Of a DNA stretch of 64,000 nt, positions 15,801 through 64,000 are shown one piece after another. The translations under genes were made by a program, and so were the position numbers. Source of the DNA: Schmidtea polychroa (Eukaryota). Position 1 is the first letter of the stretch, and each line of letters begins with the position of its first letter. The stretch lies in the NCBI GenBank assembly GCA_044892525.1, contig CM097887.1, forward strand, positions 51,398,001 through 51,462,000, written 5' to 3'. Under the pieces are notes generated by a model. It was not told the DNA's origin. It was given only the letters and a program-made list of their open reading frames with translations, and ran no database searches.

Positions 15801-18800
15801 TAAGGGACAATCGAATAATTACAACAATACTCCATGCATCACCAGAATAGATAGTATTGTCCTCACTGGGTTGTTTGTACAAAGTAATCAAGAAGTCATT
15901 CCGCAGTAATAATAATGTAATTGTATAATTTAATTTTTCCAATTTTCTTAACGATAAAGTTAATTATAATTTGATTGACATTAAACAGTAATTTAAATAA
16001 TATTTTTTATATTTAAATTTATCAACATTTCATCGATCATAATATTTATGAAAATATTAATTCAAAATAATTACCAAATTGTCAATTTTAGAAAATAATG
16101 TTTGAATAATTTTAATCAGCGGTTTCTAAACACTTAAAAGATCGTAAAATTTTCGTGACCCAGTAAATGATAATGATAAAAGAACGAATCAAATGATCGC
16201 CTTATTTTTCTGTTTTTTTATTTGGTATATTAATTTAAGACATTAATTTAAATATAAAAAGGCACCTTTATTTAACATCATTAAACAGTAGTCAGTACTT
16301 ATTTTGAATTTTTTGACTAATAAATATCAAATTGATTAATTAATTATTAAATCGATTATTAAATAATTAAATTCATAAAACTTTTGTCAAGCCTAATAAA
16401 AATGTTTTGGATATTTATATTATGAAAATTAAAATTATAAACAAAATTCCTTAATATGATATACCGAATTATCAACTTGATATCCTACATAAATAATAAG
16501 ACAAAGCTGATTATAACATTTTACACAAAATAGATAGTTGTGGTAAACAAAATTTATACTAAAATTTTGTATAAATTTCGGTTTGTGCTCATAACGGTTA
16601 ATGAATATTACAGTTTCTTGAGCTCTATTATGTTATCTGTATGGTTGTAATTTAGCATACTAAAATTATGCTACTATTGTGGGGGTTCGTATTGAGTAGT
16701 GCAAAAAATTTTTAAATCAATAAAATGCCAATACTTAAAAAATCAAAATTAATTAAAAATTTGAAAAATTAAAAGTTGACCTATTTCGGTGGAAACAGAT
16801 GTGTGCCCAAGCACCAACAAGTGCAATGTCAGATTTCTGTAAATTGCCACCTTTTTTAGAATTCCTGAACCTGAACTCACCCACTGAGTCCACATCTTGC
16901 GAAATCGATCATTAAAGGGTTTTTTGAGACAGGAATCCGGTGGCTGGATTATAGATGTGAGTTCTCCCGGAATTACAGCAAGGTTAGTTTTGAGATAATT
17001 TGCTCTTAACATCTCCCATTCCAACAATGAAATTTGTAAAAAAAAAATTAATTTGTACTTTTATCGACCCGTGTATAAGTCGAAGTGGCTATTTAAAATT
17101 TGAAGTAAATTTCTCTACTTATACGATTATTTTTTTAAATGTTTTTGAAAATAGCTTAATTTTAAACATAATTGATTATTTAAATAAAATAGTGCATTTT
17201 GTTTATTAAATATATAATATTGTGGTGGCCTTTGAAATGTTAATAACTGATTTTGCATTTTTATTTATCATTTCGTTAATTTCTTTTTCATTAATATCAT
17301 CAAATTTTGTACATTTAGCTAACCATGCATTATTAACAACATAATCAACGGACAACAAAGAATTTATGACGAAATTTAATTCATTTCAATTACTAACTTC
17401 TTTGACTTTGGAATTATTTTCATTAATTTTAAAATTTTGAAATATACCATTAGTTCTGCTTAATTAAAGAACAATGGCACCAATTTCTAATAACGTTTCA
17501 ACCAACTGTTTTCCTATTCCTTTCGAACCACCGTTCACTAAAACTGTCTTACAAGAAAAATCGTAATTTATCGTCATTCAATATTTTAATAAAATTAACT
17601 GATATTAAAAATAATTTAATAAATTGAAAACAACACTAATCATGTAATAAATATATAAACTGTAGTCACTCTCGCTTTAATATTTAAATTTTTGCTTTAA
17701 TTTACTTAATTTAAAAATATTGATTTAATTTAAAATTTTGGATCATTGATTACTTAATTTGAAAATTTAAACCCATAATTTACTTAATTATCCTCAGGCG
17801 CGTACGCAGGATGAATCCATGGGGGGGGGGTTTAGAAAACATATTTTGTATATGTATTTTTATTTTTTCACGTAATAGCTAATAGCTAGCACTATTTACC
17901 AAATTATATTCAAATTATATTTCACTTTATTTCAATATAAAAACAATTACCTATAGGTATATTTTTCTCTCAACTTTTTTAAAGAAAATTGTAAAGAAAA
18001 CTAAATAAAAATTTATTAAGAAATATGAATAATAATTATACATTATAAGAAAAATTAATATAAAAGTTTTATTAGAAAAAAAGTAATATACTATATACAT
18101 ATTAAAAATTATATAAGAAAAATTAATAAAAAATTAAGCAAGAAAAATTAATAGAAAATTATACATATGATGAATATCTTTGTATAAGAAAACTCAATAC
18201 AAAACTCAATATTAAAAATTATGTATTGTTTTCTTATAAAATAGAATAAAAATTGCATATTCAGCAAAAGGACTATTTTCTGAAAAAAATAAAAAGCGAT
18301 ATAAATTAAGACTGAAGTTCAAAGATTTTTCTATCCATAAATACCTAATCCAAGCGAATTTCTAATTTACGTGAACTTTTTGCTAGTTCATCTAGAACTG
18401 CATCTGTAGAAATCGCGACATTACGATGAATATTAAGTAACACTAATCCATTTAACCTATCTTCACTCATTGTGTTGCGTAAATACGTTTTAAGTCGTCT
18501 CAATGTTGAAAAAGATCGTTCACTGCTTGATGTTGTAACTGGTAGTGTAGCAAAAACAAATATTTTAAGTAATTTTCGAACAGTTGGGAAAATTGAATCG
18601 TCGCATGCTAAAAATGCATTATGAGCATTTTTTGGTGTATTCGAAGAATTTAAAACATGGCGCCACCATAGCTTCAGCTCACCAATGCCCTCAACTATGC
18701 TACAGTTTGTAATACTATTATATTTTCCTAAAAGGATTTTTGCAGAATTTTCGTGCTCCGATGAAAAGTTTTGTTCATTTGGCAAAAAACACATAAAACT

Positions 18801-21800
18801 TTGAAATATATTTTTATGTTGCAGAAACCGATCGTGAATTTGCATCTTTGTAGCATCCACCAAAGGAATGAAGAAAAAAAATCTTTGATGTTATTCGAAT
18901 CAGAATCTACATAACGAAAGCATAATGAAAATGGTTCAATACCAGCTATATCACTAGTTTCGTCAGCCAAAATCGAAAATGATTTCGCACTATTTATTTT
19001 AGCAACAATTGAACGAACAACTATTATGTTGCATGCACTTATAATTTCGTTTTGAATTCTTGGACTCAAATAAGTTGCATTTTTTCCTGACACCTCTAGA
19101 TGATTTTTAAGTATTTCATCTTCACAATGAACTCTAAAACGTAAAAGTGCTTGAAAATTTCCATCATTTTCCTCTGGATTATCAAGTGTTAAAGTGCCAG
19201 AGTCTCTATGTCCTCTTAAAGGCAAACCTTGTCGACCGCAAAAAAGTATAGCTATATATCGGCATTCGGAATATTTCTTAAATTGTTTTAATTTTATATA
19301 TTTTTTAATTATATTTTTTTATATTGTTGTTGGAATCATGGGGAGGGTTAACCCCCCCCCCCCTCGCGCATGATTATCCCTTATTTACCTATTTATCCTT
19401 GTATTACTTAATTTAACATTTCACACCATAATTTACTTAACAACCATATATATAACCCTTATTTACATATTAAACCAATAATTTCATGTGGTAATTTAAA
19501 GATTTGCATTAATTAAATTAATATTAATTAAAATATCAACTTAATAATTAAACTTAAACAATTCGTTTAAGGAAGGCAATGCTGAAAATTCGTNNNNNNN
19601 NNNNNNNNNNNNNNNNNNNNNNNNNNNNNNNNNNNNNNNNNNNNNNNNNNNNNNNNNNNNNNNNNNNNNNNNNNNNNNNNNNNNNNNNNNNNNNNNNNNN
19701 NNNNNNNNNNNNNNNNNNNNNNNNNNNNNNNNNNNNNNNNNNNNNNNNNNNNNNNNNNNNNNNNNCAATGTCAATGGAAAAGAAATCAGTGGTAAATTTG
19801 AAAAAAAAGTTCTTATAATATTAATAATTAAACTTAAAATATATTATTAAATTAATTAAATTAAAATGATTGTTTAAATATTCAAAAAAAACATTTTTAA
19901 AAAGAAAAACATTATAAAAAATTCATGCATCTTTCGCCATTTCAATCACTAACCCATATCAAAATCTATAAAAAACAAAAGCCAATCATTCGAGAAGCTG
20001 AAACCTATGTCTACCAAGACGAGATCTCTCTGTTGATTACCTTAATCATCGACATCTTCTATTCGACCAAAGAAATTCTCCGTATCAGCTGGAATGATCA
20101 ATATGTCTTCGATTGCCAAAAGAAGTTAATGATCATTGTCGTTCCAGATAAATATTCCAATACTTTACATCATACGATAATGGAGTCGATATTCCTAAAA
20201 GCGAGTTCATCAACAATCTCAGTACAATCACCAGATCAAGTACCCATCCTTTCGTGGAAACATTGACTGTTATAGCAAATATTTCTATGATCGTTTTCAA
20301 TGTCGTTTTCAATCGAAACTTCATGCAAATTAGTCTCGTGTCTCCACATAAACAACTAATATATTTGAACAACATACGCAATACTTTATCAAAAGTGTCA
20401 CAGAAATATTTCACTGAAATCTATTGTTTTCGAAATAATTTCTCATCCGAATGTTATAATATTTATTTATTTCAGAATTCGATGGGAAGAATTTCCTTGA
20501 TTTTTATTGGAACTGAATTTTAGAATTGATTAAAAATATTGTTTCAGCAAGCTTTTCTTATAATACAGTGTACCCTCAATTACCCGTGCATGGATTATCC
20601 GGTTTGCGGATTATTCGTGCTTGAAAAATATATTTTTTAATTCAAATTTAATTTGATTGATTTTTTTTCTATTACGATCTTAAATACGCGCGTTGTTTGA
20701 AAGAAATTATTTTTAATTTCTTTCTGTGTGATATTATTTTTCTTGTTATATGTAATCTCAAAAATTCATATTTTACCTCTACATATCTTTACCGTTAAAA
20801 TGGAGAAAGACTGATTAAGAAAAAAAACTAAAGAAAATTGTACTCAAGATAAAACAGAAACTTACATTAATTGACAGATTCGAAAAAGGAGAATCCACGT
20901 TGGAAAATTTTTATTTTTTGGAAGGAAAACACAGAGAAGTGGCTTATTTATGATTTAATTGATCAAGGCTTTAAACGTATGGACGATCCATATATCGTTT
21001 CTCTTGTTGCTCAAGAGGAAGAAAATGACAGTAATACTACAAGCGCAGAAGATACCAGCGGTTACGTTAGTCATGAAACGGATTGAATTGTATTGAAACA
21101 TTGCTAGATTACGCTGAACAAAAGGGAACTGAATATATTAATGTAATAGCTTTAAAAATATTTCGAAAACAAATGAAAATAACAGATTTTTTTAAAATTT
21201 GTGTACATTTAAAAGTATACTTTTATATTTTCATGTTCGTATATATGATAAAATATTATAATTTTACTTGTTTGTGTTTTCTTGACAAATAATGAATATA
21301 AAAATGTGTTAAATTTTGTGTTGTATATATGATATTATATTCGAAAATAAAAATACGATCATTCTGATTATCTTTGTTTTTCAATTATCCGTCACCATCC
21401 TTCCAAGCATTATTGAGAGTGCACTGTATTTCTATAGATTTCGATAATACCACCAAACGGATCGCTACAAATATCTATAGTTTTTCTAAGCTACTTGATA
21501 ACGAAGCGAATACTGTCGAAATATATCTTAAAAGCATGCTTCATTGGCGCTTTTAATAAAGATTATTCCCATTGTTTCCATATATATATACGATTTAAAA
21601 TAATAGTAAACAGATTCAAAATAAAGAAAATTCATTCATATAAAACAATACTTTAAAATTTAATTAAAAAAAGTACTTGTAACACTAAAAATTTTAAATT
21701 TGGTTAAACAATTTTTCTAATTAAATATAAAACTTAAGACGGCATCTAGCCAGTAAAAATGAAAAATAAATAAAAAGCCTATGACCTCTTCCGAATTAAA

Positions 21801-28407: not shown

Positions 28408-31400
28408 TCAGTATTGCCCGGTGAAAAGAGTTTGACAAATTATTGGATAATTCAGCTCCAAATAATATCGTCCTTGGCCCCAGTCAATAATACTTCCGGA
28501 CTCAACGACGGCAACAAATTTACCAGATTCATTTTTTAATTGTATGTCAATTATTTCCAATTGATCTAGGCCACTTTGGACAGGTTTGGTACCTTCGGTG
28601 TACATGAGAGTCATATGAGCACGACATCCAAACGGTCGTCTGACTTGTTTGACGCCATTTAACTTTGCTAAAATAATGGTTGTTAATAATCGTGTAGAAA
28701 TAAAATATTTTCATCAAATTATGATTGTATAGGGCTGATAGTAACAATACAGTTGATTTGATTTTAGATGAAGGAAAAACTCGTGTTTTTATGTCAAAAT
28801 CTAGTAAAGAATTACATAGAAAATATGACCCCTAATTCCATTGGTTCAATCACTTATTATAGGTCTTCAAATGATGCAGATGATTCATTCAAGGCCAATC
28901 GAAGGTATTCTGATCGTTTCAGAACACAGAAAAATCTCCACAGCATCTTGATAAAAGAGAAACAGCTAGTGCTGATAGAGTTGACAGTGATTTTACGTGA
29001 ACCCAGGCTCTTTTGAAAATGTTACCGAATAGAACTCACAATAAAAAAAATCAAGCTACAAGACTAGCAAAAAGAGTCTTACTTTCTCTTTTCAAGGAAA
29101 CATGATTCAAACGATTTCTTTTATTTTATGTTTAACACATAATTGTAGGAATTCTTGTCTTGATTGACGTCCTGAGAAACATTGTAAATATGTTGAATAA
29201 ACATGCCAAATATATTTTAATTGTGCACATACAAATGTAATAAGAATCGTTTGGATGTTTATATAGTTTCCATCTGCCTTGAACTGATATTTAGCCGTTG
29301 AAATTTCATAGCTGTGCCAAACACTTTGACAATTTTCGCAGTCTTGATTCGTGCGTGCTTCTCGCGTACTTACCGGAACCAGATAAATTTGTTTGTAAAT
29401 TTCGACGAAATATACATTTTTTTTGATTTCGTTGATTTTGTTTCACGGACATATATTTACAGGGGGACTAATTAACAATATTATTAAAAAAACATACATT
29501 TATTTTTTATGTGTACAATGTCAAATCATCATCTTAAAAATAAAAATTACATTAAGACAAAACATCAAATTTCATTCTAGGATGAACGCTCGTTTTAATG
29601 CTAGAATTTATAAAGGTTATCAAAATTATTACATCTAGCCTTACTTATACACCTTACTTATTGCGTACATGACGCATATTGTATATCATTTCCAAAGCGA
29701 GAAAATTAATAAAAAAATTAATATTTTCAAGGGAAACGGACATGAGCGTATGCCAAATGATGAGACGAATATGGTAATATAAAATTATTAAAGGAATACA
29801 AACTAATTAATTAATTAAGTGTAAAAAAATAATTAAATTAGTCCCGGCTCCTGATGAGGATATATTTTGATGGAAATTTTTATGAAGTAAAAACTTCCTA
29901 TAAAAAAAGCTCTCGACTTAGGCAAATCGCATTTCTGGTCGAAGGTAAAAATTGTAGTAAAGAAGTGACGAAACTGAAATTAGAGCAGAAAACAAAAGTT
30001 TTTTTGAGTAGTATAGGATTTGTTCAGTGAACTTACTTGAGACAGTCTAACAAAGGGTTAATTGCCCACAGATCCAGTAAATTCATTGAAATTGTATTGA
30101 CAAAATTTCATAGATTGTAAAGTGTAATATCAATAACCGTTACTTGTGTTTTCATTCTTTTGATTAATAGCACGTGGAGTTAGATCATCAAATAGCTTGG
30201 CGAACCATATAAATTTACTCAACACATTGTTCCCTTTTGGTTTTTGACTAGTTATGGAAAAGTAGAATGTGATAAAGCGCTAGAAAAATACATAAATTGA
30301 GTATTTTTAAAATAAATACACTTAATAAATGGTTGTCTTCAATTTTTGTCCGTCTAAGTGTACTTTTTATTATTTTTCTCTGCTTACTACAGTAAATGTC
30401 CTTAATTTATGGTGGTCATCCGTAATTTTTCTTATTTCAAGTAAGAGTATATTTGTTCTATAAATAAATTAATTGTCTTCTATTACACCTTAATTTATGG
30501 AAAAAATTATTTGTAATTCATGCCATTTGATGTAGCTATTGGAGAAAGATTGATTTTGACAGGAAAAGGCATGAAATTACATTAAGTATATGTAAAAAAA
30601 ACACCAAGCAAACACTGCAAAATAGGTAAAAATAACATAAAAATAAGGAAACATTATTAAAAATTAAAAAATATATAAAACTGATAAAAATTATATCAAA
30701 AAGAAATTGAGTTAAAATTATTCAAATTTGTTGAAAAGCACTAAAACATACACACTAACCAACACACCAAAATCAGGCTATATATACAATAAGATTGAAT
30801 GTAATATTAAAAGAAATAATGAAATTTATTTAATATCTTGTGCGATTCATAAGTCTTCGTCTCTAAAACTGAAATAAAACAACAGTATGAACAAACTAAA
30901 TGTATTGATTTATTTAATGCATAACAAAAAAAATAACAGTAAGGACAAATAACGGTAAATAATAAGCAATTTCATAGCAACTGTTCAAAATGTTCACCAT
31001 CTTGCTCCAAAAAAAGATTGAATCGTTTCCTGAAGCTTGAATAACATTTAGGGACGACTTCTTGATTGATGTTTATTAATTCATATGAAATTTCTTCTTC
31101 AAAAGTCCAATATAGTGAGGTATGGAGATCTTGGTGACCATCCCTTTACGACCAATCCACCGCTGAAGAAAATGTTGATCAAGCCATTGTCATACTGAAA
31201 TGAGGCGGTGCCCCATCGTGTTGATACCAATGTTGATTGTCATTTCCAATGAAGAACAACAGCTTTTGATTTAAAACAGTGACATACCGCTCTTTGTTCA
31301 TTGTTTCACAACTGATACTGAAGGTAACACCAAGATCATATGAAATAGTCGCCCAAACAGTTAGTCTAGGTGGTACAGAACAAATGGTGTTCATTTTCTT

Positions 31401-34400
31401 TAGCGTAATAAAAGAAATTATTTTTTCGTACGAGACCGTTTAGAAAAAACGAAGTTTCATCTTAGAAAATAATCTTGCTATGGAAATTAACACTGTTTTC
31501 GTTGACTATCCAAGAACAGAATACAGCCCTCCTATCGGGATCCTATATATGCCCATCAAAACAAAAATGATAGAAAGAATTATAAAAGGCTCAAGGAAGA
31601 CATATGAAACTCATCGGGGCTTCTAACAATAACAAAACCATTTTGAAAACGGTTTGTGCCCGCATCCTTAAAATGGCACACTAGTAGAATCAACACCCAA
31701 TATAATAGCTTGCCTACTATATTTTGCCTTGCATATTGATTATGCATTTGATACTTTTTATTAATAAATGTTTAACTTTCCATTTTCTTCAAACTTTTGT
31801 TTCCAGTATTGCACAGTTGTCCTAGCTTGTGTTGCAGAATTGAAATGTTGCTGAAATTCTTGGCAAGCTTTGACACTACTCTGGTACACTATTGCAAGGC
31901 TAACTATAATACTCTAACACTCTATTCGCAAGCGAAATTTATCATTACGAGATGCTTCCCCCATATTGTTAATCAGTGAATAATAATTAATATCACTGAG
32001 TGTGAGAATAAATTATATTGTGTTTTGTTGTTTTATTTTAGTTTTAGAGACGGAAACTTATGAATCGCACGGTATTTATATATTTATATGGTAAATAGGA
32101 CCGCATTTACACTTTCGGGGGCCGAGGCAGAGACAGATATTGGTACTGATATACAATTTTTACTTTCTCCGCATTGTGAGAAAGTCATGTAATCACTGTT
32201 TATCTGTTTCTTTGTGATTCTTGAACGCTCAATTTATTTTTCAGTTATGTTTTATTCATTTAAGTTACTTATTGTTATAAGTAACCTAAATGAATAAATA
32301 AATAATAATAATTAATTTTTATTATATTATGTTATTGCATTCTATATTAACTATATTATTCTATATTAAATGATTCTTATATTCTTTTATTATTTTTGTT
32401 TATTTTGTCAACTTGGTTTTAAAACTTTCTAAAAATCGAAAATAACCTGCTTTGAATAGTGGAAGAGCCCCTAGGGTATTTTATATATTTCAAGTGTTTG
32501 AAAGAGATAGCTTCAATATCACTTGTAATAAAGCGTTAGGATATTTGCCGATGTAAAAGGTTTGATAAAATATTATACAAATTTGACATCAATTTAATAA
32601 AATTAAGTAATAAAATAAATCTGGTTTAACTTGTAAGTAAATTTTTAGGAATATATATTATGAAATATAAAATTGTGTTATATTACTTATTCCGGTTTTC
32701 TTGCTGAGACTGGTTGGCTTGGATCCATATTTATTCATGGCAGATGAAATATCTTCTTGATCATCACCAGCCCATAATTGAATTTGCTTGGGACCCGCCA
32801 ATTGTACATGACCACTAAACGTCTTTGGAGTCAATAGAAATCCTTTAATGTGAATTGGAAATAACTGTCCAAGACTTTCTTGAACAGCTCCAGACTTAAG
32901 ATAAGATTCAGCGTCAGTAGCTGTCCCATACCCACAAAATTTCGTTGTCACGTGCAATCTGTCGGTTTTCATTCGCCAATGATCTAACAAATCTGCCTTG
33001 GATACAACTGAAAATTAGATTTAAACAATAAAACTGATATTAAAAATGTTAAAATCAAATTTTGAAATTTTTCTTTTGAATCGATAATTGAGTGCTTGCA
33101 TGTCAACATTTAATATATCTACCCATATCATTTAGTAGNNNNNNNNNNNNNNNNNNNNNNNNNNNNNNNNNNNNNNNNNNNNNNNNNNNNNNNNNNNNNN
33201 NNNNNNNNNNNNNNNNNNNNNNNNNNNNNNNNNNNNNNNNNNNNNNNNNNNNNNNNNNNNNNNNNNNNNNNNNNNNNNNNNNNNNNNNNNNNNNNNNNNN
33301 NNNNNNNNNNNNNNNNNNNNNNNNNNNNNNNNNNNNNNNNNNNNNNNNNNNNNNNNNNNNNNNNNNNNNNNNNNNNNNNNNNNNNNNNNNNNNNNNNNNN
33401 NNNNNNNNNNNNNNNNNNNNNNNNNNNNNNNNNNNNNNNNNNNNNNNNNNNNNNNNNNNNNNNNNNNNNNNNNNNNNNNNNNNATTTATTTACAGAACTC
33501 ATTAAAATACTTTTGAAACCACATATTTCCGTTCAATTTTTTACTTCTTGTCTCTTTAAATCATTCACAATTTCAACACATTAGTCGAATAGTTTCGTTT
33601 ATGTTTTCATTATAACTTCAACAAAAATAACTTTATAAGTATTTATTCCACCATTAATAAAGGAGGAAATATTGATGCATCAATTTGTTGCCCTACTAAA
33701 TTCAAACACCCAATGATGGAGATAGAAATATTCGATAAATAATAAAAAATTATAATTTGTTTTATTACACTTATAAAACTATAGAAAATTTGAATTTTCC
33801 CATAGCTTTTCATAATTTTTTTTATTCTCATTTATACAATCAAAGCAAAAATGAATCCTACATTCTGGTAAATCGCAAGCTGCTGCAAGCCCCATGCGAA
33901 TTTCTGGAATATTTATCAACAGTTCAAGCGTATCAGTGGCAAATTGTAGAATATTATCACTGTCTCTATCATTGAGGAACCAACCGAAATATAATGGAAT
34001 AGCTGGTTCGAATTCATTGATAGATTTCTCAATTTCCCAGATCGGTTCTGATTTTGTGCTTTTTTCATGTAACTGTTCAACGTCGAATCTCCATGGGGTT
34101 TTCGGAACTACGACCATTACAAGATAATCGAACCTCGTTGATATATCGACGCTATATTTATATTGCCAACATCGGATATTGGGATTATCAATGATGACTG
34201 GAGATTTTCCTGATTCCAGAGCTTGGTAGATTTGATTCTGACAAAAATTTTCAGCTTCATTGTACTTAGATCTATCATACTTGAAAGTCCCATCACTTTG
34301 AATAAAAAAATGATCCGATGAACACACCTAAAGAAATGCATAATATTATATTGTAAATTGCAAATTGCAAAATAAATTTTTTCATATCTATGATTATTGT

Positions 34401-44271: not shown

Positions 44272-46764
44272 CACTAGGACGGCCAGAGCGGTCATTTTGA
44301 CCGTTAAGCAATTTCATTTTTATTTTGTGAGAAAACGAAAAGGAATTAGCGTCTCATATTTTGTGACAATTATTCATTTTTAGTGAACTTGTTGTGCATA
44401 TCAAAGCTTCAATTATAGCATTTGTCACGACTGAGATAATGAGGCCATCCCCATGGAAGGCCGAACCGGTCAATTTGACCGGTATCTTGAAACACACAAG
44501 AAAGTCACACATAATCATCTTACATACTAGAAAATATAAAACCAAATATAATTTACACAAAACCGAAGCATTTAACAGTCATTTGGGAATGTTTTCCACA
44601 GTAAACTTTACTACATACATGGCATATAGCTCCGGATTTGTTATCACAATGAGGAGCAGAACAAGTTTTTCGCTTCTTTAATTTTGGTTGTTCAGAACAG
44701 AGTTCACCAGAGATGGGACTTGCTGTTCGACGGCTTTTGAACTCCTCATAAAGAGATGTAGCTAATTCAAAAATAAAATCCCTTCTTTTTATAGTTGATC
44801 CCGTAGCATCTTTGAAAATAACATGAGCGTTGAGAGCTGCTTTATCAAGCAAATCATAGAAAGTAGCGACTGGCCATCTTGCTGTTGCGGCTTTACTGCT
44901 GTATAAACGCAACATGCTATCCATGGTATCTACAGCTGTCTTATTTTTGTTATAAAAGTGTATCATTTCAGGCTTTCTCTTTTCGTCAGATCTCACACTA
45001 GCAGTAGAATGGAATGTTGACATGACAATGACTTTCTTGTCCGATTTGCCTTGATAGGAAACAGTGACAGTGTTTTGACACGATAAATGAGTCGATGATA
45101 AAAAGCGTTAATTTAATCTTACAGTACCAACCAATGTTGTTCGATTTACAAGGAGATGTTCAGCTAGTGAGAGACTTGTAAAGAAATTGTCAGTGCAGAC
45201 ATTGTATCCTTTATTGAAAAATGGCTCCATTAGTTTCCTGATTACAAAATCACCCAGCCGTAATCCACAGCGTTCGTTTCTATCGTAAGCCCCTAAATAT
45301 GGCATTTGATTGATGACAAATTTGGTTTTGACATCACTGAGAATCCAGTATTTGATACCGAATTTATCAGGCTTATTTGGCATAAATTGGATGAAGCAAC
45401 ACCTATTTTTTAGCGGCAAAAGTTGCTCGTCGACAGTAAGGAAGGGATTAGGAGTATAAACTTGAAGACAGTTTGAAACAAACAAGTCAAATATTTCACG
45501 AAAATGGGCATATTTATCTTGTTCTACTCTTTGACGTCGAGAACATTGTTCATCAAAACGAAGAAAGCGCAGTATCTCACGGAAACGGTTCCGAGACATG
45601 ACTTCTCTGAAGTAAGGAGATCCAAATTGAGATGACCAGATTGAATTGATAGAATGTCGGCGAAAGCCTAACACACCACGGAGATACAGCAATCCAAGAA
45701 AAGCATCTAATTCTTGTAGACTGATACACCAGTCTGACGAAGCTTCTTTTCCTTTCATAATTGTGTATTTTTGAATTAACTTCAGCATTCCCTCAGAGAC
45801 TATCAAGCGCCAAGCGCTCAGGGGTGAGTCAATTTTGCGCTTTGCAAAAGCTTTCACACCAGGTGTTTCACTAAAAATATTGTGCGCGGGGAATCTGCCA
45901 ACACTAATAGCGTGATTGTTTTCTACTCGATTCCAAAGAGTGCCATCCCTGCTAGATAAAAGCTGATTTTCTAATGAAGAAATTGAGCTATTGACTGACT
46001 CATTGTCACTTTCTAACGAACTTCCATTATCATCAGAGTTCCATTCATGTAACTCTTCGTCAGAATCATTTCTTTCGGGCTCATCATCACTTCCCATAGG
46101 CTGATCTTCATCTTCGGAGAGAGCAGTGTCAATATTCCATAGCTTCTGTAAAGCACGTTGAGCAGCAATTCTTTTAGTTGGCATATTTGATTCTAAAATA
46201 ATGATAAAAACTCCGTCAGTAAAATAAGAAACGTCAAATTTATTATTGGATTCTAATGAAAACACGGTTTTATAATGTTTGTTATCCCAAGAAGTTCAAA
46301 GATTTTCTATAACAATTATTAGATATTGTCTTATGACATTTCGTTAAGTTTTTCGTTTGATTCTTTTAATTTACCAAATTTCAAAACTTAGAACTCTTAA
46401 TGCTTGCTTAATTACACTTTTAATAAGCACTATCTTTGAATAAAAGCAAGAGAATATTTATAAACAAGAAATGAAGTATACATACATACCAGTCTGAATA
46501 AACGCGAAGACAATGTTTAAAATAGTGTAGCTTTGTGTCAGCTAAACAAATATTTTTATTTCATTGTTGTAAGTAGTTTAATAAATTAACTACTGTTAGA
46601 ATAAAAATAGTTAAATTTTGAAAGCATGTTAGTAGCACAAAGAAAGTATTGCTAAATGAGTTGCATCATAGAAATCTCAGCATGAAAATAAGGAGCATAT
46701 GTGCACCGGTCAAATTGACCGGTTTGGCCTTCCAAGGTATAAAATATTTCCGGCCGTCCTAGTG
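44272..46764 (-). mobile_element. Near-intact piggyBac element (2493 bp)
   Basis: TTAA at 44268-44271 and 46765-46768; perfect 13-bp TIR CACTAGGACGGCC; 29-bp internal inverted repeats at 44455-44483 and 46705-46733 (one mismatch). Confidence 0.95.
44553..46184 (-). pseudogene. piggyBac (PGBD4-like) transposase interrupted by one in-frame TAA at 45110-45108
   Basis: From ATG 46184: catalytic motifs TVDEQLL, CTDNFFTS, AVDTMDSML; KPDKFGIK; RWP; C-terminal Cys-rich CSAPHC..CHVCSKVYCGKH. The two ORFs are in the same frame. Confidence 0.9.
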
Positions 46765-50368: not shown

Positions 50369-52429
50369 TTATTCAAATTTATTCTGTTTAGATGGAATAA
50401 AATAATTATCATCATCACTATTCATGCCGACTTTATTCTTTCGCTTGTTGGGTTTAGGATTTGATTTACCCGAAACCGAAATCATCACATGAGGCGGTTC
50501 CCTTAAGCCAAATGTCTTGGCCAACGCCGCCAGGTCTAACTTTTTAATATCGAAACACCCCAAAGAGAAAGTACAATAAGCCCGTACAAAGGTCGTAAAA
50601 CCTAACTTTGCTGAATTCTTAAGAGCGGAATTAGATTCGACAATATTTTCGAAAGATTCTTGAATGTCGAACATTTTCGACTCGTCGAATTCAAATTCAT
50701 TCAAAGGAACTTTATTCTTGGCAAGCAACTCAAGAAATCCGGTTTCTTCCGGCCTAAGAAAAATCAAAGCTTTTCCATCTTTCCCTGCACGAGCTGTACG
50801 GCCAACTCTGTGAATATATTCCTTAGGATCATCGGGAGGGTCATACTGAATAACCCAATCTACTTTAGGAACGTCTAATCCTCGAGCCATTACATCAGTA
50901 CAAAGAATAATTGCAGCATCTTTCTCATTAAATTTTTCAAAATTTGCAAACCTTTTAGTTTGACTCTGTTTCCCATGGAGCGCCAATACTGGCACACTTA
51001 TAATGTTGAATAACTCATAAAAATATTTCACTTCTAGGCACGTAGACATAAATATCATTATCTAGAAATGAATATAGTTAAGGTAAAAATAGATGAAGAC
51101 CAAATTATAAGAAAATAATCGAGTGATGGGGACAAGGGGAGGTAACTAGGGGGGAAGGGAAAATAACCTTATAATGAAGTAATTAATTAGGAAACAAATC
51201 ATATAAAATGAAAAAAAGTTGGGACGGGTGGGATGGGGGTGCTATTAAGCATTTTATGATATTGATTATTGAAAATATGATAGAGGTACAATATACATAT
51301 AAGCTGAAAACATTGAAAATGAAAAATAATCATTAATCTTAAATAAAGAATTTAACCGGAAAATATTCAAGTTATAATATAAAATAGGCATCAGGAACCC
51401 ATCGATAAACAAAACCCATTAAAAAGTGGAATTTTTCACCAAATCAAGTATTTTATCGATTACATATTAAAAGGAAAATTTATAAATAAATTTGTTAGTC
51501 CCCCATAAAAAATTAGCAATAAATAATAAAATATTTACTTTTTTCTTTAAATTTCTCTTAATAAATGTGTATAATACTCTGAACCGATCGCAGGGTTTAC
51601 AGATTATATACCCCTGGGTCAACTGTGAAACGGTTGCGTTATCTCCATCTGAAACGGCTTCTTGTAGATTGACTTTGCTCATGTCAATACACATACAACT
51701 TTCTTTCATACTCAAACAAGCAAGAGTTAAAACTTTATCGTCTAGGGAAACCTTTTTGTTGTTTGCATCAGTTACTGGTTTTTTCATTTTCATTTTTAAT
51801 TTTGCAGAGTTCATTTTCAAGGTAGCTGAAAACAAAACGGTTTGTCGTTTTTTGGGGAGTTTTCGAACAATTGCTTTCATTTCTTCGAGAAATCCTTGTT
51901 CCATTAATCGATCGGCTTCGTCGATGATTAAAGTTTGAAGTCGATGAAATAAAAAAAACTTTGTATTATTTAAATGATCGAGCAATCTTCCGGGTGTTGC
52001 TACAAGAATTGTTACGCCTTCCTGGAGATATTTGGCTTCCACATTACGATTGTTACCACCAATAAGGAGGCCAGTTCTTATTTCTGTATGCGAAACAAGT
52101 TTTCTAAGAACTTCGAATATTTGAAGACTTAATTCTCTTGTTGGTGACATGATTATTGCTGCTGTTCCGTGCCTTGGTTCGAAATTACTATTTAATACTT
52201 TATTTACTAAAGGTACTAAGAAGGCCAGTGTTTTTCCACTGCCAGTTTTAGCAGCACCCATTACATCTTTGTCTTCTAGAAGGTGAGGAATACAGTTATT
52301 TTGAATAGGAGTCATAGTTATCATATTCATATCTTTGAGAGCTTTCTTAATATTTTCATGTATGTTGAGCTCTTCAAACTTATTATTAATAATTATTTGA
52401 CAGCCAGGAAATTTTCGATCTTCACTCAT
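50369..52429 (-). CDS. DDX18: DEAD-box RNA helicase DDX18/HAS1, 527 aa; exons 52429-51539, 51061-50369
   Basis: Q motif (FEEL..MTPIQ), AKTGSGKT, SPTRELSLQ, TPGRLLDHL, DEAD, SAT, LHGKQSQTKR, TDVMARGLD, and the HAS1-type QYDPPDDPKEYIHRVGRTARAG. One phase-0 477-bp GT-AG intron (KKK|IMIF). Confidence 0.93.
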
Positions 52430-53989: not shown

Positions 53990-54480
53990 ATCAATTGCGG
54001 ACTTTGATGTTAGTCGTTGCTCCAAATTTTTCCAAGCAAAAATTTTTTTCCATGCTCACTTGAATTTTCATGTTCTTCTATTCTCTTACATTTAAATGTT
54101 TCCAATCATTGAATCCTTTATTTGTATCTGACATTGAATTTAATGCAGCATTTTTTAGCAAAAAGTATGCAAGTAAAACAAAATATTTTGTCCAATTTAA
54201 CACTATAAATAAACCATGACCTTACAATTGTTTCCCCATTTGTTAATGTCTTTATGAACCAGTCATTTGAGAATTTTCTTTTATCTTTATGATTGTGCTC
54301 ATTGTATTCTCTTCCCAGTGCTGGCCCCGATTTAGCTAAGTATTCATGAATTTTGTTATTTAAAACATGCCAAGAACTTGGATCATTATTATCAAAAATC
54401 GTCAGATTTTTTGACTTCTGCATGCGTGAAGCCAACAGATTTCTGTGCTGTTTCTCTTTTTTTGAACTTTATCGGTGTTT
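53990..54480 (-). mobile_element. hAT N-terminal (TTF zinc-finger, ZMYM1-like) relic
   Basis: KRKFSNDWFIKTLTNGETIVRSWFIYSVKLDKIFCFTCILF..GFNDWKHL..HENSSEH. Confidence 0.75.
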
Positions 54481-55624: not shown

Positions 55625-56493
55625 TTAACTTCCGAATTTTTTATCAATCACTTCTTGAACTTCTTCCTTCGAATAAAGATGAAACTTTCCTTTCTCTGTA
55701 ATGCTGGACATTTCGATATTTGTGCAATCCAATTTTTCTTCCATCACGTGCTTCAATATTGACAAAGCTTCCATGGCCGCTTCTTCAATCGTCATATTTT
55801 TATTGTAAATTTCTTGCAAGGATTGCTGGGCTCCTTCGCATCCTGATCCTATAGCTTTTGCAAAATAATTGATATACGTTCCACTAGGATCCATGTGCAA
55901 CAATTGTGGTCCATTTTCATCTACTCCGGCAAATAAAAGTGCTACTCCAAATGGACGACTCTAAAATTATTTTACAATTCTTAAATGTCTGACCAAGAGG
56001 AAATTACCATGGCAGCTGGTTCGTTATCATTTGCAGCAAAGGATAAAGCCATTTTACTAACTGCTTTAGTAATGCTTTCAATAGGCATTCTTTCATTGTG
56101 ATTAAACCAATGATTTGTTGACTCAACTCTGGCTTTTTCAACGAGTATTCTTGAATCTGCCACCAATCCACTAACAGCAATAGCTAAATAACGAATATTA
56201 CTAATTATTAATATGAAAGACATACCAGTAAAATCGTCAACTTTAAAAATTTTTTCTACACTCGATGGAACTAGCAATGGTGATGTTATTCGCTTTTCTA
56301 CAGCAAGAACTACACCATGATTTGTTTTGATTCCTATTGCAGTGGACCCAAGCTATAATTTACAATTTAAAAATTAATATTCTACAAATAAAAATACTTT
56401 AGTTGCTTCGATAGCATATTCAACTTGAAAAAGACGTCCTTCAGGACTAAATGTGTTAACTCCATGATCATATTCAGAATTAGTCATAAACAT
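55625..56493 (-). CDS. PSMA5: Proteasome subunit alpha type-5, 244 aa; exons 56493-56398, 56352-56226, 56183-56008, 55960-55625
   Basis: [32 protein letters not shown]|[71 protein letters not shown]. Three GT-AG introns of 45, 42 and 47 bp; the 735-nt total is in frame. Confidence 0.96.
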
Positions 56494-57220
56494 TTTCAAT
56501 TCAACTTAAATTTTACCAACTTTAATAAATAAGTTATTAAGTAAAATTTAAATATATTAATGTAAGATAAATTTAAACAATTGATAAGTTAGACATTTTA
56601 TAAAAAATAGAATCTCGTAAAAACTTTGAATAATATTTTTAAACAGAGAATTTTGTATGAAATTGCGTAACAATATTTTCATATTTAAATTTATAAAAAA
56701 ATTAATCTAATTAAATAATTTTTTAATTGCACTCAAATTTTAATGGATATTGTTGAGCTCGAAACGAAAACTGAAAGCTTGTTTAAATGCGTCAGCAATA
56801 CATAGTATAGAAACCTCACTAAATCGAAATAAATCTATGATTATACGTCAGATAATACAAAGTACACAACACACTGATGATAAATAAAACACAATAAAAA
56901 TGATAAAAGTGAGAACTAACAATGACCAGCATAATTAAGGAAAAAACAACTCATAGGAAAAATCTACCAACTCGAAAAAAGAGAATAACAAATAAAATAA
57001 ATAATCATTAATATTAAAAGTTAATTATATATTAGTATTGAACGATAAATGGTTAATGTATTTCAAAGCACACTTAGCATGTATATAAATTATCTATCTA
57101 TTCAAATAAAATTTTAAACAAAACTCACGAATATCATACAATTGAAGTAATAAAACAAAACATAAAATCACAAAAATCGATAAGTAACAATAGATATATC
57201 AGTGAATAGGATGAATAATA

Positions 57221-57384
57221 GCCACAAAGAAAATTTCAATTGAAATCGATTGTTTTTAGAAATAATTTTCATCGAGTTTTATAATATTTGATTATTTTAG
57301 AATTCAATGGGGAGAATTCCCTTGATTTTTATTGGAACTAAATCTTAGAGTTGATTGAAAATATCGTTTCAGAAAACTTTTCTT
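57221..57384. repeat. ~165-bp dispersed sequence, paralogous to 20395-20559
   Basis: Co-linear alignment with the copy in the WDR20 intron. Confidence 0.85.
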
Positions 57385-57420
57385 CATATAAGATTTATAT
57401 GGATTAGACCGTCTAATGGC
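57385..57420 (-). other. Planarian-type spliced-leader (SL) exon copy, not followed by a GT donor
   Basis: Minus strand reads GCCATTAGACGGTCTAATCCATATAAATCTTATATG. The Schmidtea SL1 exon as I recall it is GCCGTTAGACGGTCTTATCGAAATCTATATAAATCTTATATG, so this copy differs by a 6-nt deletion and 2 substitutions. It ends in the ATG typical of flatworm SLs and is followed by AAGAAAAG rather than GT. Confidence 0.75.
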
Positions 57421-59499
57421 TCTCTACACAGACGTATTGCCAACTTCTCAGAAAATTTTGAGCACCTTAGCTTTTACCAGTTTATATCAATTTCTTATTT
57501 GTAAAGCACTTTTGGAAAATTTTAAAGAAACTTTTAACAATGAGTGCATGTATATTGTGTATATTTTGTAATGCTATCGTTTCGATTAAATTTGTATGAT
57601 GTTTTAAAGGTTTTTCATCATTTTTACGATTTCTTTTCATGAACAGCTTAAAACTATCAACAATTCTACTGGGTTTAAAAAACACTCCAAATTCAGTAGA
57701 TCGTAAAGGCGTTGCATAAAAAGATTTTGGCAGAGAAACAAACCTAAAAAATAACAAAACAAATAACAACCAAAAATAGCGAATCTAAACCAAAAGAAAA
57801 TAAAAAAAGAATCATATCGTAAAACAGTTTTAACCACAGACTATGTCTTAGTAAAAAAACCATTTACAAAAAATTCGAATCAAAAAACAAAGGCCCATAC
57901 AAACTATTAGAAATAATTAAAAATGTGGCCACAATAATGAAAAACAACAAAGAAATGTAAATAAATATCCGTCTATTGAAATATTATCACCAAAATGAAC
58001 AAAGCCAATATAATGCACCAAACAACAATAACCAAGCAAACCAAAGACACGTCACACTTAGTGAATCCAACCTCGTTATCGAGTACCCGGTTACTCGGAA
58101 TTTTATTGTTTTTTTCGATTACTCGATTACCCGATTATACTCGGGCTTGTATTTGATTTGTTTTAAACATATCAACCAAAAATATTTTTCAAAAATATGC
58201 GTGGATTTGAATTTAAATCCAAGTAACTCACACTCAAGAACAACGAACCATCACAAAGATCCAAAAAAAATCCTTACACCAAACGCATACAGAAAACGGT
58301 ATAATAACTGTCTTAAATTAACCAACTAAAATCAAACATAATCAATGGTAAATTGTACAATTTTTATGTTTATTCTAATCGTTGGTTGTAACAAACAAAC
58401 CACAATATATAAATATATAAACAAATTTTTTTTTCAGTGTGATTATTATTATTGCTACTTCGTTTCCAGAATTAAGTGTTAACCTCCAGTTTAAAGAGGG
58501 AGGTTATGTGTTGTATGTTATTTTATTTTTGATGTTTGCAAATTGAATATTGTTTCTGAGAAATTTTTATTAATGTATAAAATTTTAATTGATTTTTGCA
58601 TTGAGTTTCTATCAATCATACTAAAAGACACTCCACTGAAATCATCTCCAGTTTCATTTTCAACATCCCACATTGGTTTTTCATTATAAATCAAATTTGA
58701 TTTTAATATATAAATCGATAAAAATATTTAAATACCTTGAAAATAAAACTAAAGTGACAAATAAAAAACGATTGGAAAAATACTGGAAGATTCAAAGACA
58801 GAATGTTGTTATGCGAATTTGATATGCCCCTTTCGAATCAGACTGGTTCGTATTATTATTTACTAATTTAATAAAGTTTGTTCAAATTTTATTACTTTGT
58901 CATAATCATATCATATAATAAAATATTAGCTTACTCACACTCGCCCCAGCAGTTCCAATTCAAAATTTAAAGGTAACTCTGATGGACACTACAAATTCTT
59001 TTTTAATAACATAAAAATAAAAAACAAAACAATTATTATACAAATACAATACATATACATCTACAATATAATACATCCATTATAGTACGTAAAAAGTGTG
59101 TGCAACCTTATGAAAACTAGCTTCAATATATAAGCACTAGCACTACCTTCATTCAATAATCAGAATTGTAAAACTGTTGGGTTATTGGGTTGGTGACAAT
59201 ATTTGTAAATTCAAACTTTTACTCTGACTCCAAAGCGTTTTACACTCATAGTCCTAATAGATCGTCCCGTTTATCATGACGATCTTCCCCCAGCTAATTT
59301 TATTTATTTCTTTATAAAATTGTTATTTAGGTATCCTCAACAAAACATTTTCTCCCCTTGACCCTGGAGGCCTAAATTGACTTTCCCAATCTCTATTAGG
59401 AAATCATTCTGTAACGAAAAATACAACTATTTTAACGATGAGTTTTGAAATTTAATTGCATTTTAATTAATAAGTTGACGGACACTAAATAGTCAAGGG

Positions 59500-61901: not shown

Positions 61902-62880
61902 TCACGAACTTATTTTTGGGTCTATAAATCTGTTCTAGCCCAACTCATTGTATTCAGCCCCGCTCAGACGAAGGAGACCCAGAATAAGCTGTATCGCAGC
62001 GAACACAGTCGTGACGCTCTCATCTCGGAGAGTCGTTCACAAAGGAGCTTGATTAAAGAGCAGTCCGAGGCGCTGCATAAGGTCTACTTACAGGCAGCCA
62101 CCACGCGAAAGATCGTCCAGATCCCAATCAAAGAGGCCGATAATATCTTTCCGCCTCATCATAACACCTCTTCAAATCCATCTCCGCCGCTCAAGAGACC
62201 CTGTCGAGATTGCGTCGAAACAGAACTGTCGCCCAAGCGACCAGATGTTATCATTACGGGTACTAGCAAGGCACCAACTCCTAGTGCATCCACATCAACC
62301 ACGCTTCCGCAAGCTGCAATTTCGGGCAAACCTAAACGCAAACAACTATCTCGTGCAGAGCGCAAAAGGAGACAGCGCGATCGTACATTAAGCAGACAGA
62401 ATAAGGCCTCTGCGTAAGATCCGACCACCCGAAGTACCGGTTCCGCGGTGATAGACTTGACCATCGGAGCTCCCGCGCGAATTATATCAGCCGCCGGTGT
62501 AGCCTGGGAGGAGAACGCCTCCGAGTTCTTTGATTTAGAAGAGTTGTTACTCGCCACGGAATGAGGCCCCACGGTGAAGCGTTCTCGAAAATTCTATGAA
62601 CTCACGTCATCCTGCACTGTCTCTTCTTTTCCTATGTAAATACTATGTCGCATTCTGTGTGGTTATTAGGACAATAAATTTCTATTTCTCTTTGGTATTC
62701 GTATATGTCTTTTATAATGAATTAGTATCGATATTTAAAGGTATAGAAGTACTCATTTTGGGGGAGTATAAGTCAAGTTTGCATTTGGTGTAAGACCCAG
62801 CGAGAAATCCGATCGCGTTGCTAGACGTAAGTCCTTCTATCGGAATTATCTGTGGCCTTTTGCAGTCTACTGATCGCAGG
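61902..62880 (+). mobile_element. GC-rich orphan reading frame followed by a PPT-like GGGGGAG; probable 3' region of an LTR retroelement
   Basis: Stop-free frame 61902-62417, resuming after one TAA to 62564; GGGGGAG at 62760-62766; CGTAAG.CCTTCTATCGG motif shared with the retro-relic at 43.5 kb. Confidence 0.4.
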
Positions 62881-64000
62881 TGTGGAATGAATTAGAAAAT
62901 TTGTCTTTTATTTAAAGTTCGAATTATTAGGATCTAGAATAGATTATAAATCTTCATCGTCTTTTGCAATGTGTATATTGATCATGTATTTATTGGAGCC
63001 CATTATATAATATTTAAATTTTATGATTATCACTAATCTTTCATCTTCGGCATGTTAATTATTAATTCAAAATTTGTTTCAATTGAAATAGTTACCTTAT
63101 AAATTACAATATCGTCGATGCATTAAAAATAATAATAAACAATTAGTCACAAATTAATTATTTTTAAAATAAATAAATATATTATTCAAACACGACTCAA
63201 TGTCAACGGAACATTTGATAAATATCTGACTGTTACGCATTAGATCTGATAGCTCGATAGCATAAATAAAGTTGGTCATATTCTATTCCAATACATTCGG
63301 TTGGTTGAATATATATTTTACTATTTGGATTATTTGTGCATTTATCAATCGCAATGATATAATGAAAATGTGACAGAATGCCTTAATGGCCATTCCTAAA
63401 TGCTGTCCAACTCGCACTTCATCAAACAAAAGAAGACAGATAAATAAGTATTCTTACCAACATCATCTCATCAACACGCAAGCACATTTTATAACCATTT
63501 TTATATGAGAAATGATTTGCTATAAATTATCTTGTTTATTCTCTGTTTAGCAACTGCTATTTTATAATTGAAATTGTCGAGTTTCCATAAAAATTCTCCG
63601 TAATTCAGCTGATTTTGATCTGTAAGATTACATTTTTGTTCATTTTTATTTGGTCGAACTTTTCAATTATTTTTTTCTGAAATTTTAATTTATATTGCTT
63701 AAGCAGAACTTTATTATTTTACTTCTTTGTTCTCTTTTAATTAATTGGATTTCTGTTTGCTCGCCATTGGTGGACCTTTGGCCAATTTGTTACTTGAAAT
63801 TATTCTCACTAAAAATTATTCCACTAAACATTCAATTTCAATCGATCAAACGCATTACACTCCTTTCTATCTGCTTTCCTCAATGTATGCAGTATATCTT
63901 CATTTAATAATTTGTTTGCCTCAGCTTGATCGGCATATTTCATCAACAAATCAGTAATTTCAATCTAAATAATTATAATTAAGCAAACACTAATCGAAAT

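What the first reader, a model, noticed from the sequence alone, without database searches (positions are those of the whole stretch)
57221..57420. Genomic spliced-leader exon fused directly to a dispersed sequence: an SL-capped retrocopy or SL-bearing mobile unit
A 36-nt near-copy of the planarian SL exon ends in ATG but is not followed by the GT donor that an SL-RNA gene needs. It runs straight into a 165-bp sequence with a second copy at 20395-20559, where a Tigger end sits at the position the SL would occupy. The SL-supplied ATG opens [27 protein letters not shown], a basic Ser/Phe-rich peptide resembling a mitochondrial presequence; the second copy reads through the stop position as CGA. 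This is what a reverse-transcribed trans-spliced mRNA 5' end would look like. Such SL relics are known from dinoflagellates; I do not know of a description in planarians. An alternative is a junction made by an SL-targeting retroelement (NeSL/CRE-like behaviour). The variant SL forms a perfect ATTAGAC-G-GTCTAAT palindrome and lies ~900 bp upstream of PSMA5 on the same strand.
Basis: partly seen in the sequence, partly recalled or inferred. Interest (0 to 1): 0.75.

Follow-up and report, generated by a model that had tools for sequence, protein, structure and literature searches.

The report
Dispersed repeat with spliced-leader-like head
A short non-coding repeat that begins with a spliced-leader-like segment occurs twice in this flatworm window; it is probably an old relic of an SL-tagged repeat transcript, a kind of locus already reported in parasitic flatworms, and is neither a retrocopied gene nor a working SL RNA gene.

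Summary
A 36-mer ending in ATG lies at 57385-57420 (minus strand). It runs straight into about 163 nt that recur at 20396-20559 with 88% identity. It sits 892 nt upstream of the PSMA5 start codon on the same strand.

One premise is wrong. The "Tigger end" at 20566 is the left end of an 861-bp TA-flanked non-autonomous element (20566-21426) nested in copy B. Beyond it, copy B continues with its own SL-like head, homologous to head A plus 12 nt upstream (29 of 41 columns identical; 18 of 19,817 random genomic windows score as well). So the head-body fusion is older than both copies and belongs to a repeat of about 215 nt.

The 27-aa peptide is not conserved: copy B has no ATG and an early stop. 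Neither copy has a poly(A) tract or a target-site duplication above chance. Neither has a GT donor or an Sm-like motif.

I could not test whether the head matches the planarian SL. No reference was reachable, so that rests on recollection.

Best reading (confidence 0.4): a decayed relic of an SL-tagged repeat transcript that was integrated and later copied as DNA. A 2025 paper reports 597 comparable loci in parasitic flatworms. I rate it a new member of a known kind, of modest interest.

The parts
57385..57420 (-). Head A: the 36-nt SL-like segment ending in ATG, followed by AAG rather than GT
   Evidence: Sequence. Unique in the window within 3 mismatches. Its fold is not unusual. No Rfam hit.
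57421..57432 (-). 12 nt upstream of head A that are still similar to copy B (9 of 12 identical)
   Evidence: Anchored alignments. A shared degenerate 27-mer is found only at the two heads.
57222..57384 (-). Body A: non-coding repeat body of ~163 nt
   Evidence: BLASTN to 20399-20559: 85% over 163 nt, E 7e-44. 145 of 165 identical. No conserved ORF. No Sm-like motif, no A-run of 8 or more.
20396..20559 (-). Body B: second copy of the repeat body
20560..20565 (-). Last 6 nt of head B. They include the TA next to the nested element's left end.
   Evidence: Sequence and alignment of this piece to copy A.
20566..21426 (.). Nested 861-bp non-autonomous element with terminal inverted repeats (CAGTG... 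/ ...CACTG), flanked by TA on both sides.
   Evidence: Inverted arms 20562-20595 and 21397-21430, 34 nt, 76% complementary. No ORF of 80 aa or more inside. The superfamily name was not tested.
21427..21473 (-). Head B: 5' part of the SL-like segment plus ~12 nt upstream, lying beyond the nested element
   Evidence: Sequence. Alignment to head A: 29 of 41 columns identical with one 6-nt indel, reached by 15 of 3000 shuffles and 18 of 19,817 genomic windows. Pattern match.

Best explanation
The locus is one copy of a non-coding dispersed repeat of about 215 nt. The repeat consists of ~12 nt, an SL-like head of ~36-43 nt, and a body of ~163 nt. Two old copies lie on the minus strand 36 kb apart.

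Shown:
- Both copies carry the head joined to the body at the same point.
- The fusion therefore predates both copies.
- Copy B was later hit by an 861-bp TA-flanked element inside its head.

Inferred:
- The head derives from a spliced leader.
- The fusion arose when a transcript of a repetitive, non-coding (probably mobile-element) sequence received the SL by trans-splicing and was reverse-transcribed into the genome.
- The integrated copy, with a little flank, was then multiplied at the DNA level or as part of a larger repeat. That would explain why no poly(A) tract or target-site duplication is seen and why similarity runs ~12 nt past the head.

Today it is a decaying relic. It is not a working SL RNA gene and it encodes no protein.
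For: - The head abuts the body right after ...ATG with no GT. Flatworm leaders typically end in AUG just before the donor (PMC12582326). A break exactly at an exon end points to splicing rather than random DNA breakage.
- Body copies are 88% identical.
- Copy B has a homologous head at the expected place beyond the nested element.
- The ORF is not conserved.
- No donor and no Sm-like motif occur in 280 nt downstream of either head.
- PMC12582326 reports 597 candidate SL loci in parasitic flatworms that lie with LTR/LINE elements and keep only a partial leader. Its authors suggest integration of trans-spliced retrotransposon transcripts.
Against: - No tool or held paper could test it.
- There is no poly(A) tract and no target-site duplication above chance.
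- No reverse-transcriptase or other retroelement domain appears in the ORFs tested, and the body is unclassified.
- 9 of 12 nt upstream of the 36-mer are shared by the copies. This needs the extra assumption of later DNA-level copying.
- Only two copies are visible, so neither the family's size nor its true ends are known.
- Head B does not end in ATG.
Confidence: 0.4

Rival explanations
1. An ordinary short interspersed repeat, such as a fragment or non-autonomous derivative of some transposon. Its 5' part only resembles the spliced leader by chance or by distant common origin. No trans-splicing or reverse transcription was involved.
For: - No tool confirmed SL identity: Rfam gives none, and the 18-mer scan of metagenomes gave only chance hits.
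- Similarity between the copies extends past the supposed SL start.
- No retroposition hallmarks are present.
- A 10-nt inverted repeat sits at the exact ends of body A.
- The window is rich in DNA transposons.
Against: - The inverted repeat is absent from copy B and is short for AT-rich DNA.
This is recollection, not a test.
Confidence: 0.25
2. SL RNA pseudogenes. An ancestral SL RNA gene lost its donor and intron by deletion or rearrangement, and the damaged gene with its immediate upstream flank was then duplicated at the DNA level.
For: - Similarity runs ~12 nt upstream of the head, as expected for gene copies and not for cDNA.
- Both copies lie on the same strand of one 64-kb stretch.
- SL RNA pseudogenes without a donor are reported in flatworms (PMC12582326; PMC2770079).
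Against: - Nothing downstream of either head looks like an SL RNA intron. There is no GT at the junction, no Sm-like motif, no canonical Sm site and no significant structure.
- The break falls exactly at the leader's end in copy A.
- The head is less conserved than the body: 29 of 41 against 145 of 165, Fisher p = 0.014.
Confidence: 0.15
3. One reading: a retrocopy of a trans-spliced protein-coding mRNA, in which the SL's ATG opens a presequence-like peptide.
For: An SL-like head ending in ATG is fused without a donor, and a 27-codon ORF is open in copy A.
Against: - Copy B has no ATG and an in-frame stop at codon 11.
- There is no poly(A) tract and no target-site duplication above chance.
- The body is only ~163 nt and both copies end at the same point.
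- Both copies share the fusion, so neither is a parental gene with an acceptor.
Confidence: 0.05
4. A junction made by a retroelement that targets SL RNA genes (NeSL/CRE/SLACS-like behaviour), with the body being the element's end.
For: The same sequence is joined to an SL-like head at the same point in two places.
Against: - No reverse-transcriptase or endonuclease domain appears in any ORF of 100 aa or more.
- The sequences downstream of the two bodies are unrelated, so no SL gene resumes there.
- The body is short and starts at the same base in both copies.
Confidence: 0.03

Closest known systems
SL-bearing loci associated with LTR/LINE elements in parasitic flatworms (597 loci set aside in PMC12582326, Mol Biol Evol 2025)
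   Same: A leader sequence is the only SL RNA feature present. It is attached to repeated sequence. There is no donor and no Sm-like motif. The authors also propose integration of trans-spliced repeat transcripts.
   Different: Here the host is a free-living flatworm. The attached repeat is short and unclassified, with no retroelement domain nearby. The leader looks full-length rather than partial.
Relic spliced leaders in retrocopied genes of dinoflagellates (Slamovits and Keeling 2008; Jaeckisch 2011; cited in PMC12582326)
   Same: A genomic SL is fused directly to downstream transcript sequence.
   Different: Those are protein-coding retrogenes, often with tandem relic leaders. Here there is no conserved ORF, no poly(A) tract and a single head.
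SL RNA pseudogenes lacking the donor or with aberrant flanks (PMC12582326; PMC2770079)
   Same: A leader without a usable splice donor; the locus is not functional.
   Different: Those keep the rest of the SL RNA. Here nothing intron-like follows the leader.
SL-gene-specific retrotransposons NeSL-1, CRE and SLACS (named from my own knowledge; not tested against sequences)
   Same: A mobile sequence is joined to SL sequence at a fixed position.
   Different: Those elements encode reverse transcriptase and interrupt otherwise intact SL genes inside the exon. Neither feature is seen here.

Membership tests
Functional flatworm SL RNA gene (criteria of PMC12582326) | Leader matches the species' known SL | not testable with these tools
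   No planarian SL is reachable in the held papers, in Rfam or in the sequence collections.
Functional flatworm SL RNA gene (criteria of PMC12582326) | Leader ends in AUG | tested here: inconclusive
   Head A ends in ATG. Head B does not.
Functional flatworm SL RNA gene (criteria of PMC12582326) | Canonical GU donor directly after the leader | tested here: not met
   AAG follows in both copies. The first GT is at +8 in A and +47 in B.
Functional flatworm SL RNA gene (criteria of PMC12582326) | Sm-like motif (UVUUUGG) or canonical Sm site downstream | tested here: not met
   None within 280 nt downstream of either head.
Functional flatworm SL RNA gene (criteria of PMC12582326) | Hairpin holding the donor and a hairpin before the Sm site | tested here: not met
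   Folds of head plus body and of the downstream flank are no better than shuffles (z -0.58 and +1.8). The consensus fold of the body is weak.
Functional flatworm SL RNA gene (criteria of PMC12582326) | Not within 500 bp of mobile elements | tested here: not met
   Head B is split by an 861-bp inverted-repeat element. The sequence after each head is itself a dispersed repeat.
Retrocopy of a trans-spliced mRNA | SL fused at its 3' end to transcript sequence, without a donor | tested here: met
   Copy A. This depends on the head really being the SL.
Retrocopy of a trans-spliced mRNA | Downstream sequence is a coding mRNA | tested here: not met
   The ORF has 27 codons in A and is interrupted at codon 11 in B.
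Retrocopy of a trans-spliced mRNA | Poly(A) tract at the 3' end | tested here: not met
   No A-run of 8 or more within 280 nt downstream of either head.
Retrocopy of a trans-spliced mRNA | Target-site duplication | tested here: not met
   Best flank matches score 4.5 and 5.5 against a null mean of 5.3.
Retrocopy of a trans-spliced mRNA | Homology between copies stops at the SL's first base | tested here: inconclusive
   9 of 12 nt upstream of the 36-mer are shared. The true SL start in this species is unknown.
Retrocopy of a trans-spliced mRNA | Parental gene with an AG acceptor at the junction | not testable with these tools
   No genome or transcriptome of the species is reachable. Copy B is not a parent, because it carries the head.
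SL-tagged mobile-element relic (PMC12582326) | The leader is the only SL RNA feature and is attached to repeated sequence | tested here: met
SL-tagged mobile-element relic (PMC12582326) | The attached repeat is a recognisable LTR or LINE element | tested here: inconclusive
   No reverse-transcriptase or other retroelement domain in ORFs of 100 aa or more. No repeat library was available to classify the body.
SL-gene-specific retrotransposon (NeSL/CRE/SLACS) | Reverse-transcriptase/endonuclease ORFs, with the SL gene resuming beyond the element | tested here: not met
   (no such domains). (downstream flanks unrelated).
MITE (inverted-repeat element) | Terminal inverted repeats conserved among copies | tested here: not met
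   A 10-nt inverted repeat lies at the ends of body A only. Copy B has none.

The most novel reading that the evidence does not exclude
The unit belongs to a planarian family of short non-coding retroposons that carry a spliced leader as their 5' end. In one version the family is SL-headed and SINE-like. In another the same RNA was trans-spliced more than once, and the two heads, which differ more than the bodies do, represent different SL classes joined at one acceptor.
Probability: 0.12. Interest if true: 0.6.

Novelty: new member of a known kind. Interest (0 to 1): 0.3.

Why it matters
If the head is a true spliced leader, the locus shows that free-living flatworms also keep SL-tagged repeat sequences in their genomes. 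Such loci can mislead SL-gene annotation and SL-based transcript-start calling. With a genome-wide census they could also give a fossil record of which repeat transcripts were trans-spliced. For this window the practical result is negative:
- there is no new gene;
- there is no mitochondrial presequence;
- there is no SL RNA gene upstream of PSMA5.

Tried and rejected
- Rfam at gathering scores on the whole window, and at E up to 10 around both copies, gave nothing relevant.
- Eight literature searches and many look-ups found no held paper that prints a planarian SL. Zayas 2005 and Rossi 2014 are not held.
- I tried to fetch planarian DNA through proteins. The DDX18-type ORF and its nearest relative (86% identical) have no contig on record.
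- A metagenome scan with the head's last 18 nt gave 45 hits. None has the head's 5' half, so all are chance.
- MITE idea: a 10-nt terminal inverted repeat occurs in copy A only.
- A 12-nt direct repeat flanks head A. My hand estimate for AT-rich DNA puts it at chance level, so I dropped it.
- The target-site-duplication search gave chance-level scores.
- A tRNA-derived SINE head: no tRNA-like sequence anywhere in the window.
- Link to the neighbouring hAT transposase: sequence next to body B is not repeated near copy A. A long AT-rich inverted pair at 17676-19885 would place body B outside that element, which is weak evidence.
- A third copy at 30660-30716 is only a weak, A-rich match.
- The bacterial-type promoter/terminator scan is uninformative for a eukaryote.

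Full report
**Observation.** On the minus strand the window reads GCCATTAGACGGTCTAATCCATATAAATCTTATATG at 57420 down to 57385. AAGAAAAGTTTTCTG... follows directly. The 36-mer is unique in the window within three mismatches. The following ~163 nt (57222-57384) recur at 20396-20559. BLASTN gives 85% over 163 nt with E 7e-44, and a global alignment gives 145 of 165 identical. The window has 28% G+C and two N runs, which I left untouched.

**Neighbouring genes.** PSMA5 lies downstream on the same strand. Exon 1 (56374-56499) carries the Proteasome_A_N signature. Two further exons match the Proteasome family, and the last exon matches alpha type-5 chains best. I searched the exons one by one by reference and left out the joined model. 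The start codon is 892 nt from the head. A DDX18/HAS1-type helicase follows at 50369-52429. Its named relatives are flatworm proteins at about 50% identity. One unnamed entry is 86% identical. This fits a free-living flatworm whose close kin are missing from the collections.

The CAGTGTACCC... end at 20566 has an inverted partner ending at 21426. The arms are 34 nt long and 76% complementary, with TA on both sides. No ORF of 80 aa or more lies between them. It is an 861-bp non-autonomous element nested in copy B. I did not test the name 'Tigger'.

**Copy B has a head too.** Read on the minus strand beyond that element, copy B continues with ...TTTGTAGCGATCCGTTTGGTGGTATTATCGAAATCTATAGAAATA. I compared the two pieces of copy B with copy A separately and never joined them.
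- Head A plus 12 nt upstream aligns to this piece with 29 of 41 columns identical and one 6-nt indel.
- That score is reached by 15 of 3000 dinucleotide shuffles and by 18 of 19,817 random windows of the same DNA. A second scoring scheme agrees.
- The place was fixed in advance by the nested element, so no correction for searching is needed.
- A degenerate 27-mer built from the two heads occurs nowhere else in the window.

Both copies therefore have the order short upstream stretch, SL-like head, body. The head-body fusion is older than both.

**What the unit is not.**
- It does not encode the proposed peptide. Copy A reads M-K-K-S...S-P-H-stop (27 codons). Copy B lacks the ATG and has a stop at codon 11.
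- It is not a working SL RNA gene by the criteria of PMC12582326. There is no GT at the junction (first GT at +8 in A, +47 in B). There is no UVUUUGG or canonical Sm site within 280 nt. No fold is better than shuffles, and there is no Rfam match. Mobile sequence sits right at the locus.
- It lacks the marks of a fresh retrocopy. There is no A-run of 8 or more. Flank repeats score 4.5 and 5.5 against a null mean of 5.3.
- It is not visibly an SL-targeting retroelement. No reverse-transcriptase domain appears in any ORF of 100 aa or more. The DNA downstream of the two bodies is unrelated.

**What it most likely is.** The junction in copy A falls exactly after ...ATG. Flatworm leaders end in AUG just before the donor (PMC12582326), so the break sits where splicing would put it, not where random breakage would. 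That favours an RNA-mediated origin of the fusion. The shared 12 nt upstream (9 of 12) and the common 3' end without an A-tail suggest that later spread was at the DNA level or as part of a larger repeat. The head is somewhat less conserved than the body (29 of 41 against 145 of 165, Fisher p = 0.014). That could mean faster decay or heads of different SL classes, and I cannot tell which.

PMC12582326 reports that 597 of 1179 candidate SL loci in parasitic flatworms lay with LTR or LINE elements and kept only leader sequence. Its authors propose integration of trans-spliced retrotransposon transcripts. The class is therefore known. I found no report of it for planarians in the held library.

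**Limits.**
- SL identity is the weak point.
- Only two copies are visible, so family size and true ends are unknown.
- I did not use the large protein search, because no protein question was open.

**Verdict.** The best explanation is a decayed SL-tagged repeat relic (confidence 0.4). The rivals are an ordinary repeat with a chance resemblance (0.25), an SL RNA pseudogene family (0.15), an mRNA retrocopy (0.05) and an SL-targeting element (0.03). It is a new member of a known kind; interest 0.3.

Noticed in passing
window 20566-21426: An 861-bp non-autonomous element with CAGTG termini and TA on both sides is nested in the head of repeat copy B. No second copy of it occurs in the window.
   Followed up: partly
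window 18345-19225 (-), next to N gap 19594-19765: Fragmentary hAT-type transposase (DUF4371 and the hAT dimerisation domain in two overlapping ORFs), just downstream of repeat copy B on the same strand. No link to the repeat was found.
   Followed up: partly
window 44553-46265 (-): A piggyBac-type transposase (DDE_Tnp_1_7) spread over two ORFs.
   Followed up: no
window 50369-52429 (-): A DDX18/HAS1-type DEAD-box helicase in two large exons. The nearest database relative is 86% identical and has no contig on record. Named flatworm relatives are about 50% identical.
   Followed up: partly
window 62001-63000: A G+C island (45% against 28% overall) holds two overlapping antisense ORFs of 122 and 137 aa (62049-62572). 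The 122-aa ORF has no Pfam match; the 137-aa ORF was not scanned.
   Followed up: no
window 32658-34327 (-), around N gap 33139-33483: ORFs with CNPase and AAA_33 matches, probably exons of one gene that the masked stretch interrupts.
   Followed up: no
window 57309-57322 and 20483-20496 (repeat body; columns 64-75 of alignment A4): A 4-bp hairpin in the repeat body keeps pairing through one G-C to A-U double change between the two copies. By my rough estimate a single such event is not significant.
   Followed up: partly
window 30660-30716 (+): A weak A-rich match to the 3' half of the repeat body (78% over 59 nt). It may be a third decayed copy or low-complexity noise.
   Followed up: partly
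window 54118-54435 (-): A 105-aa ORF between PSMA5 and the helicase has a Cys-rich tail and no Pfam match. It could be a zinc-finger remnant of a transposase.
   Followed up: no
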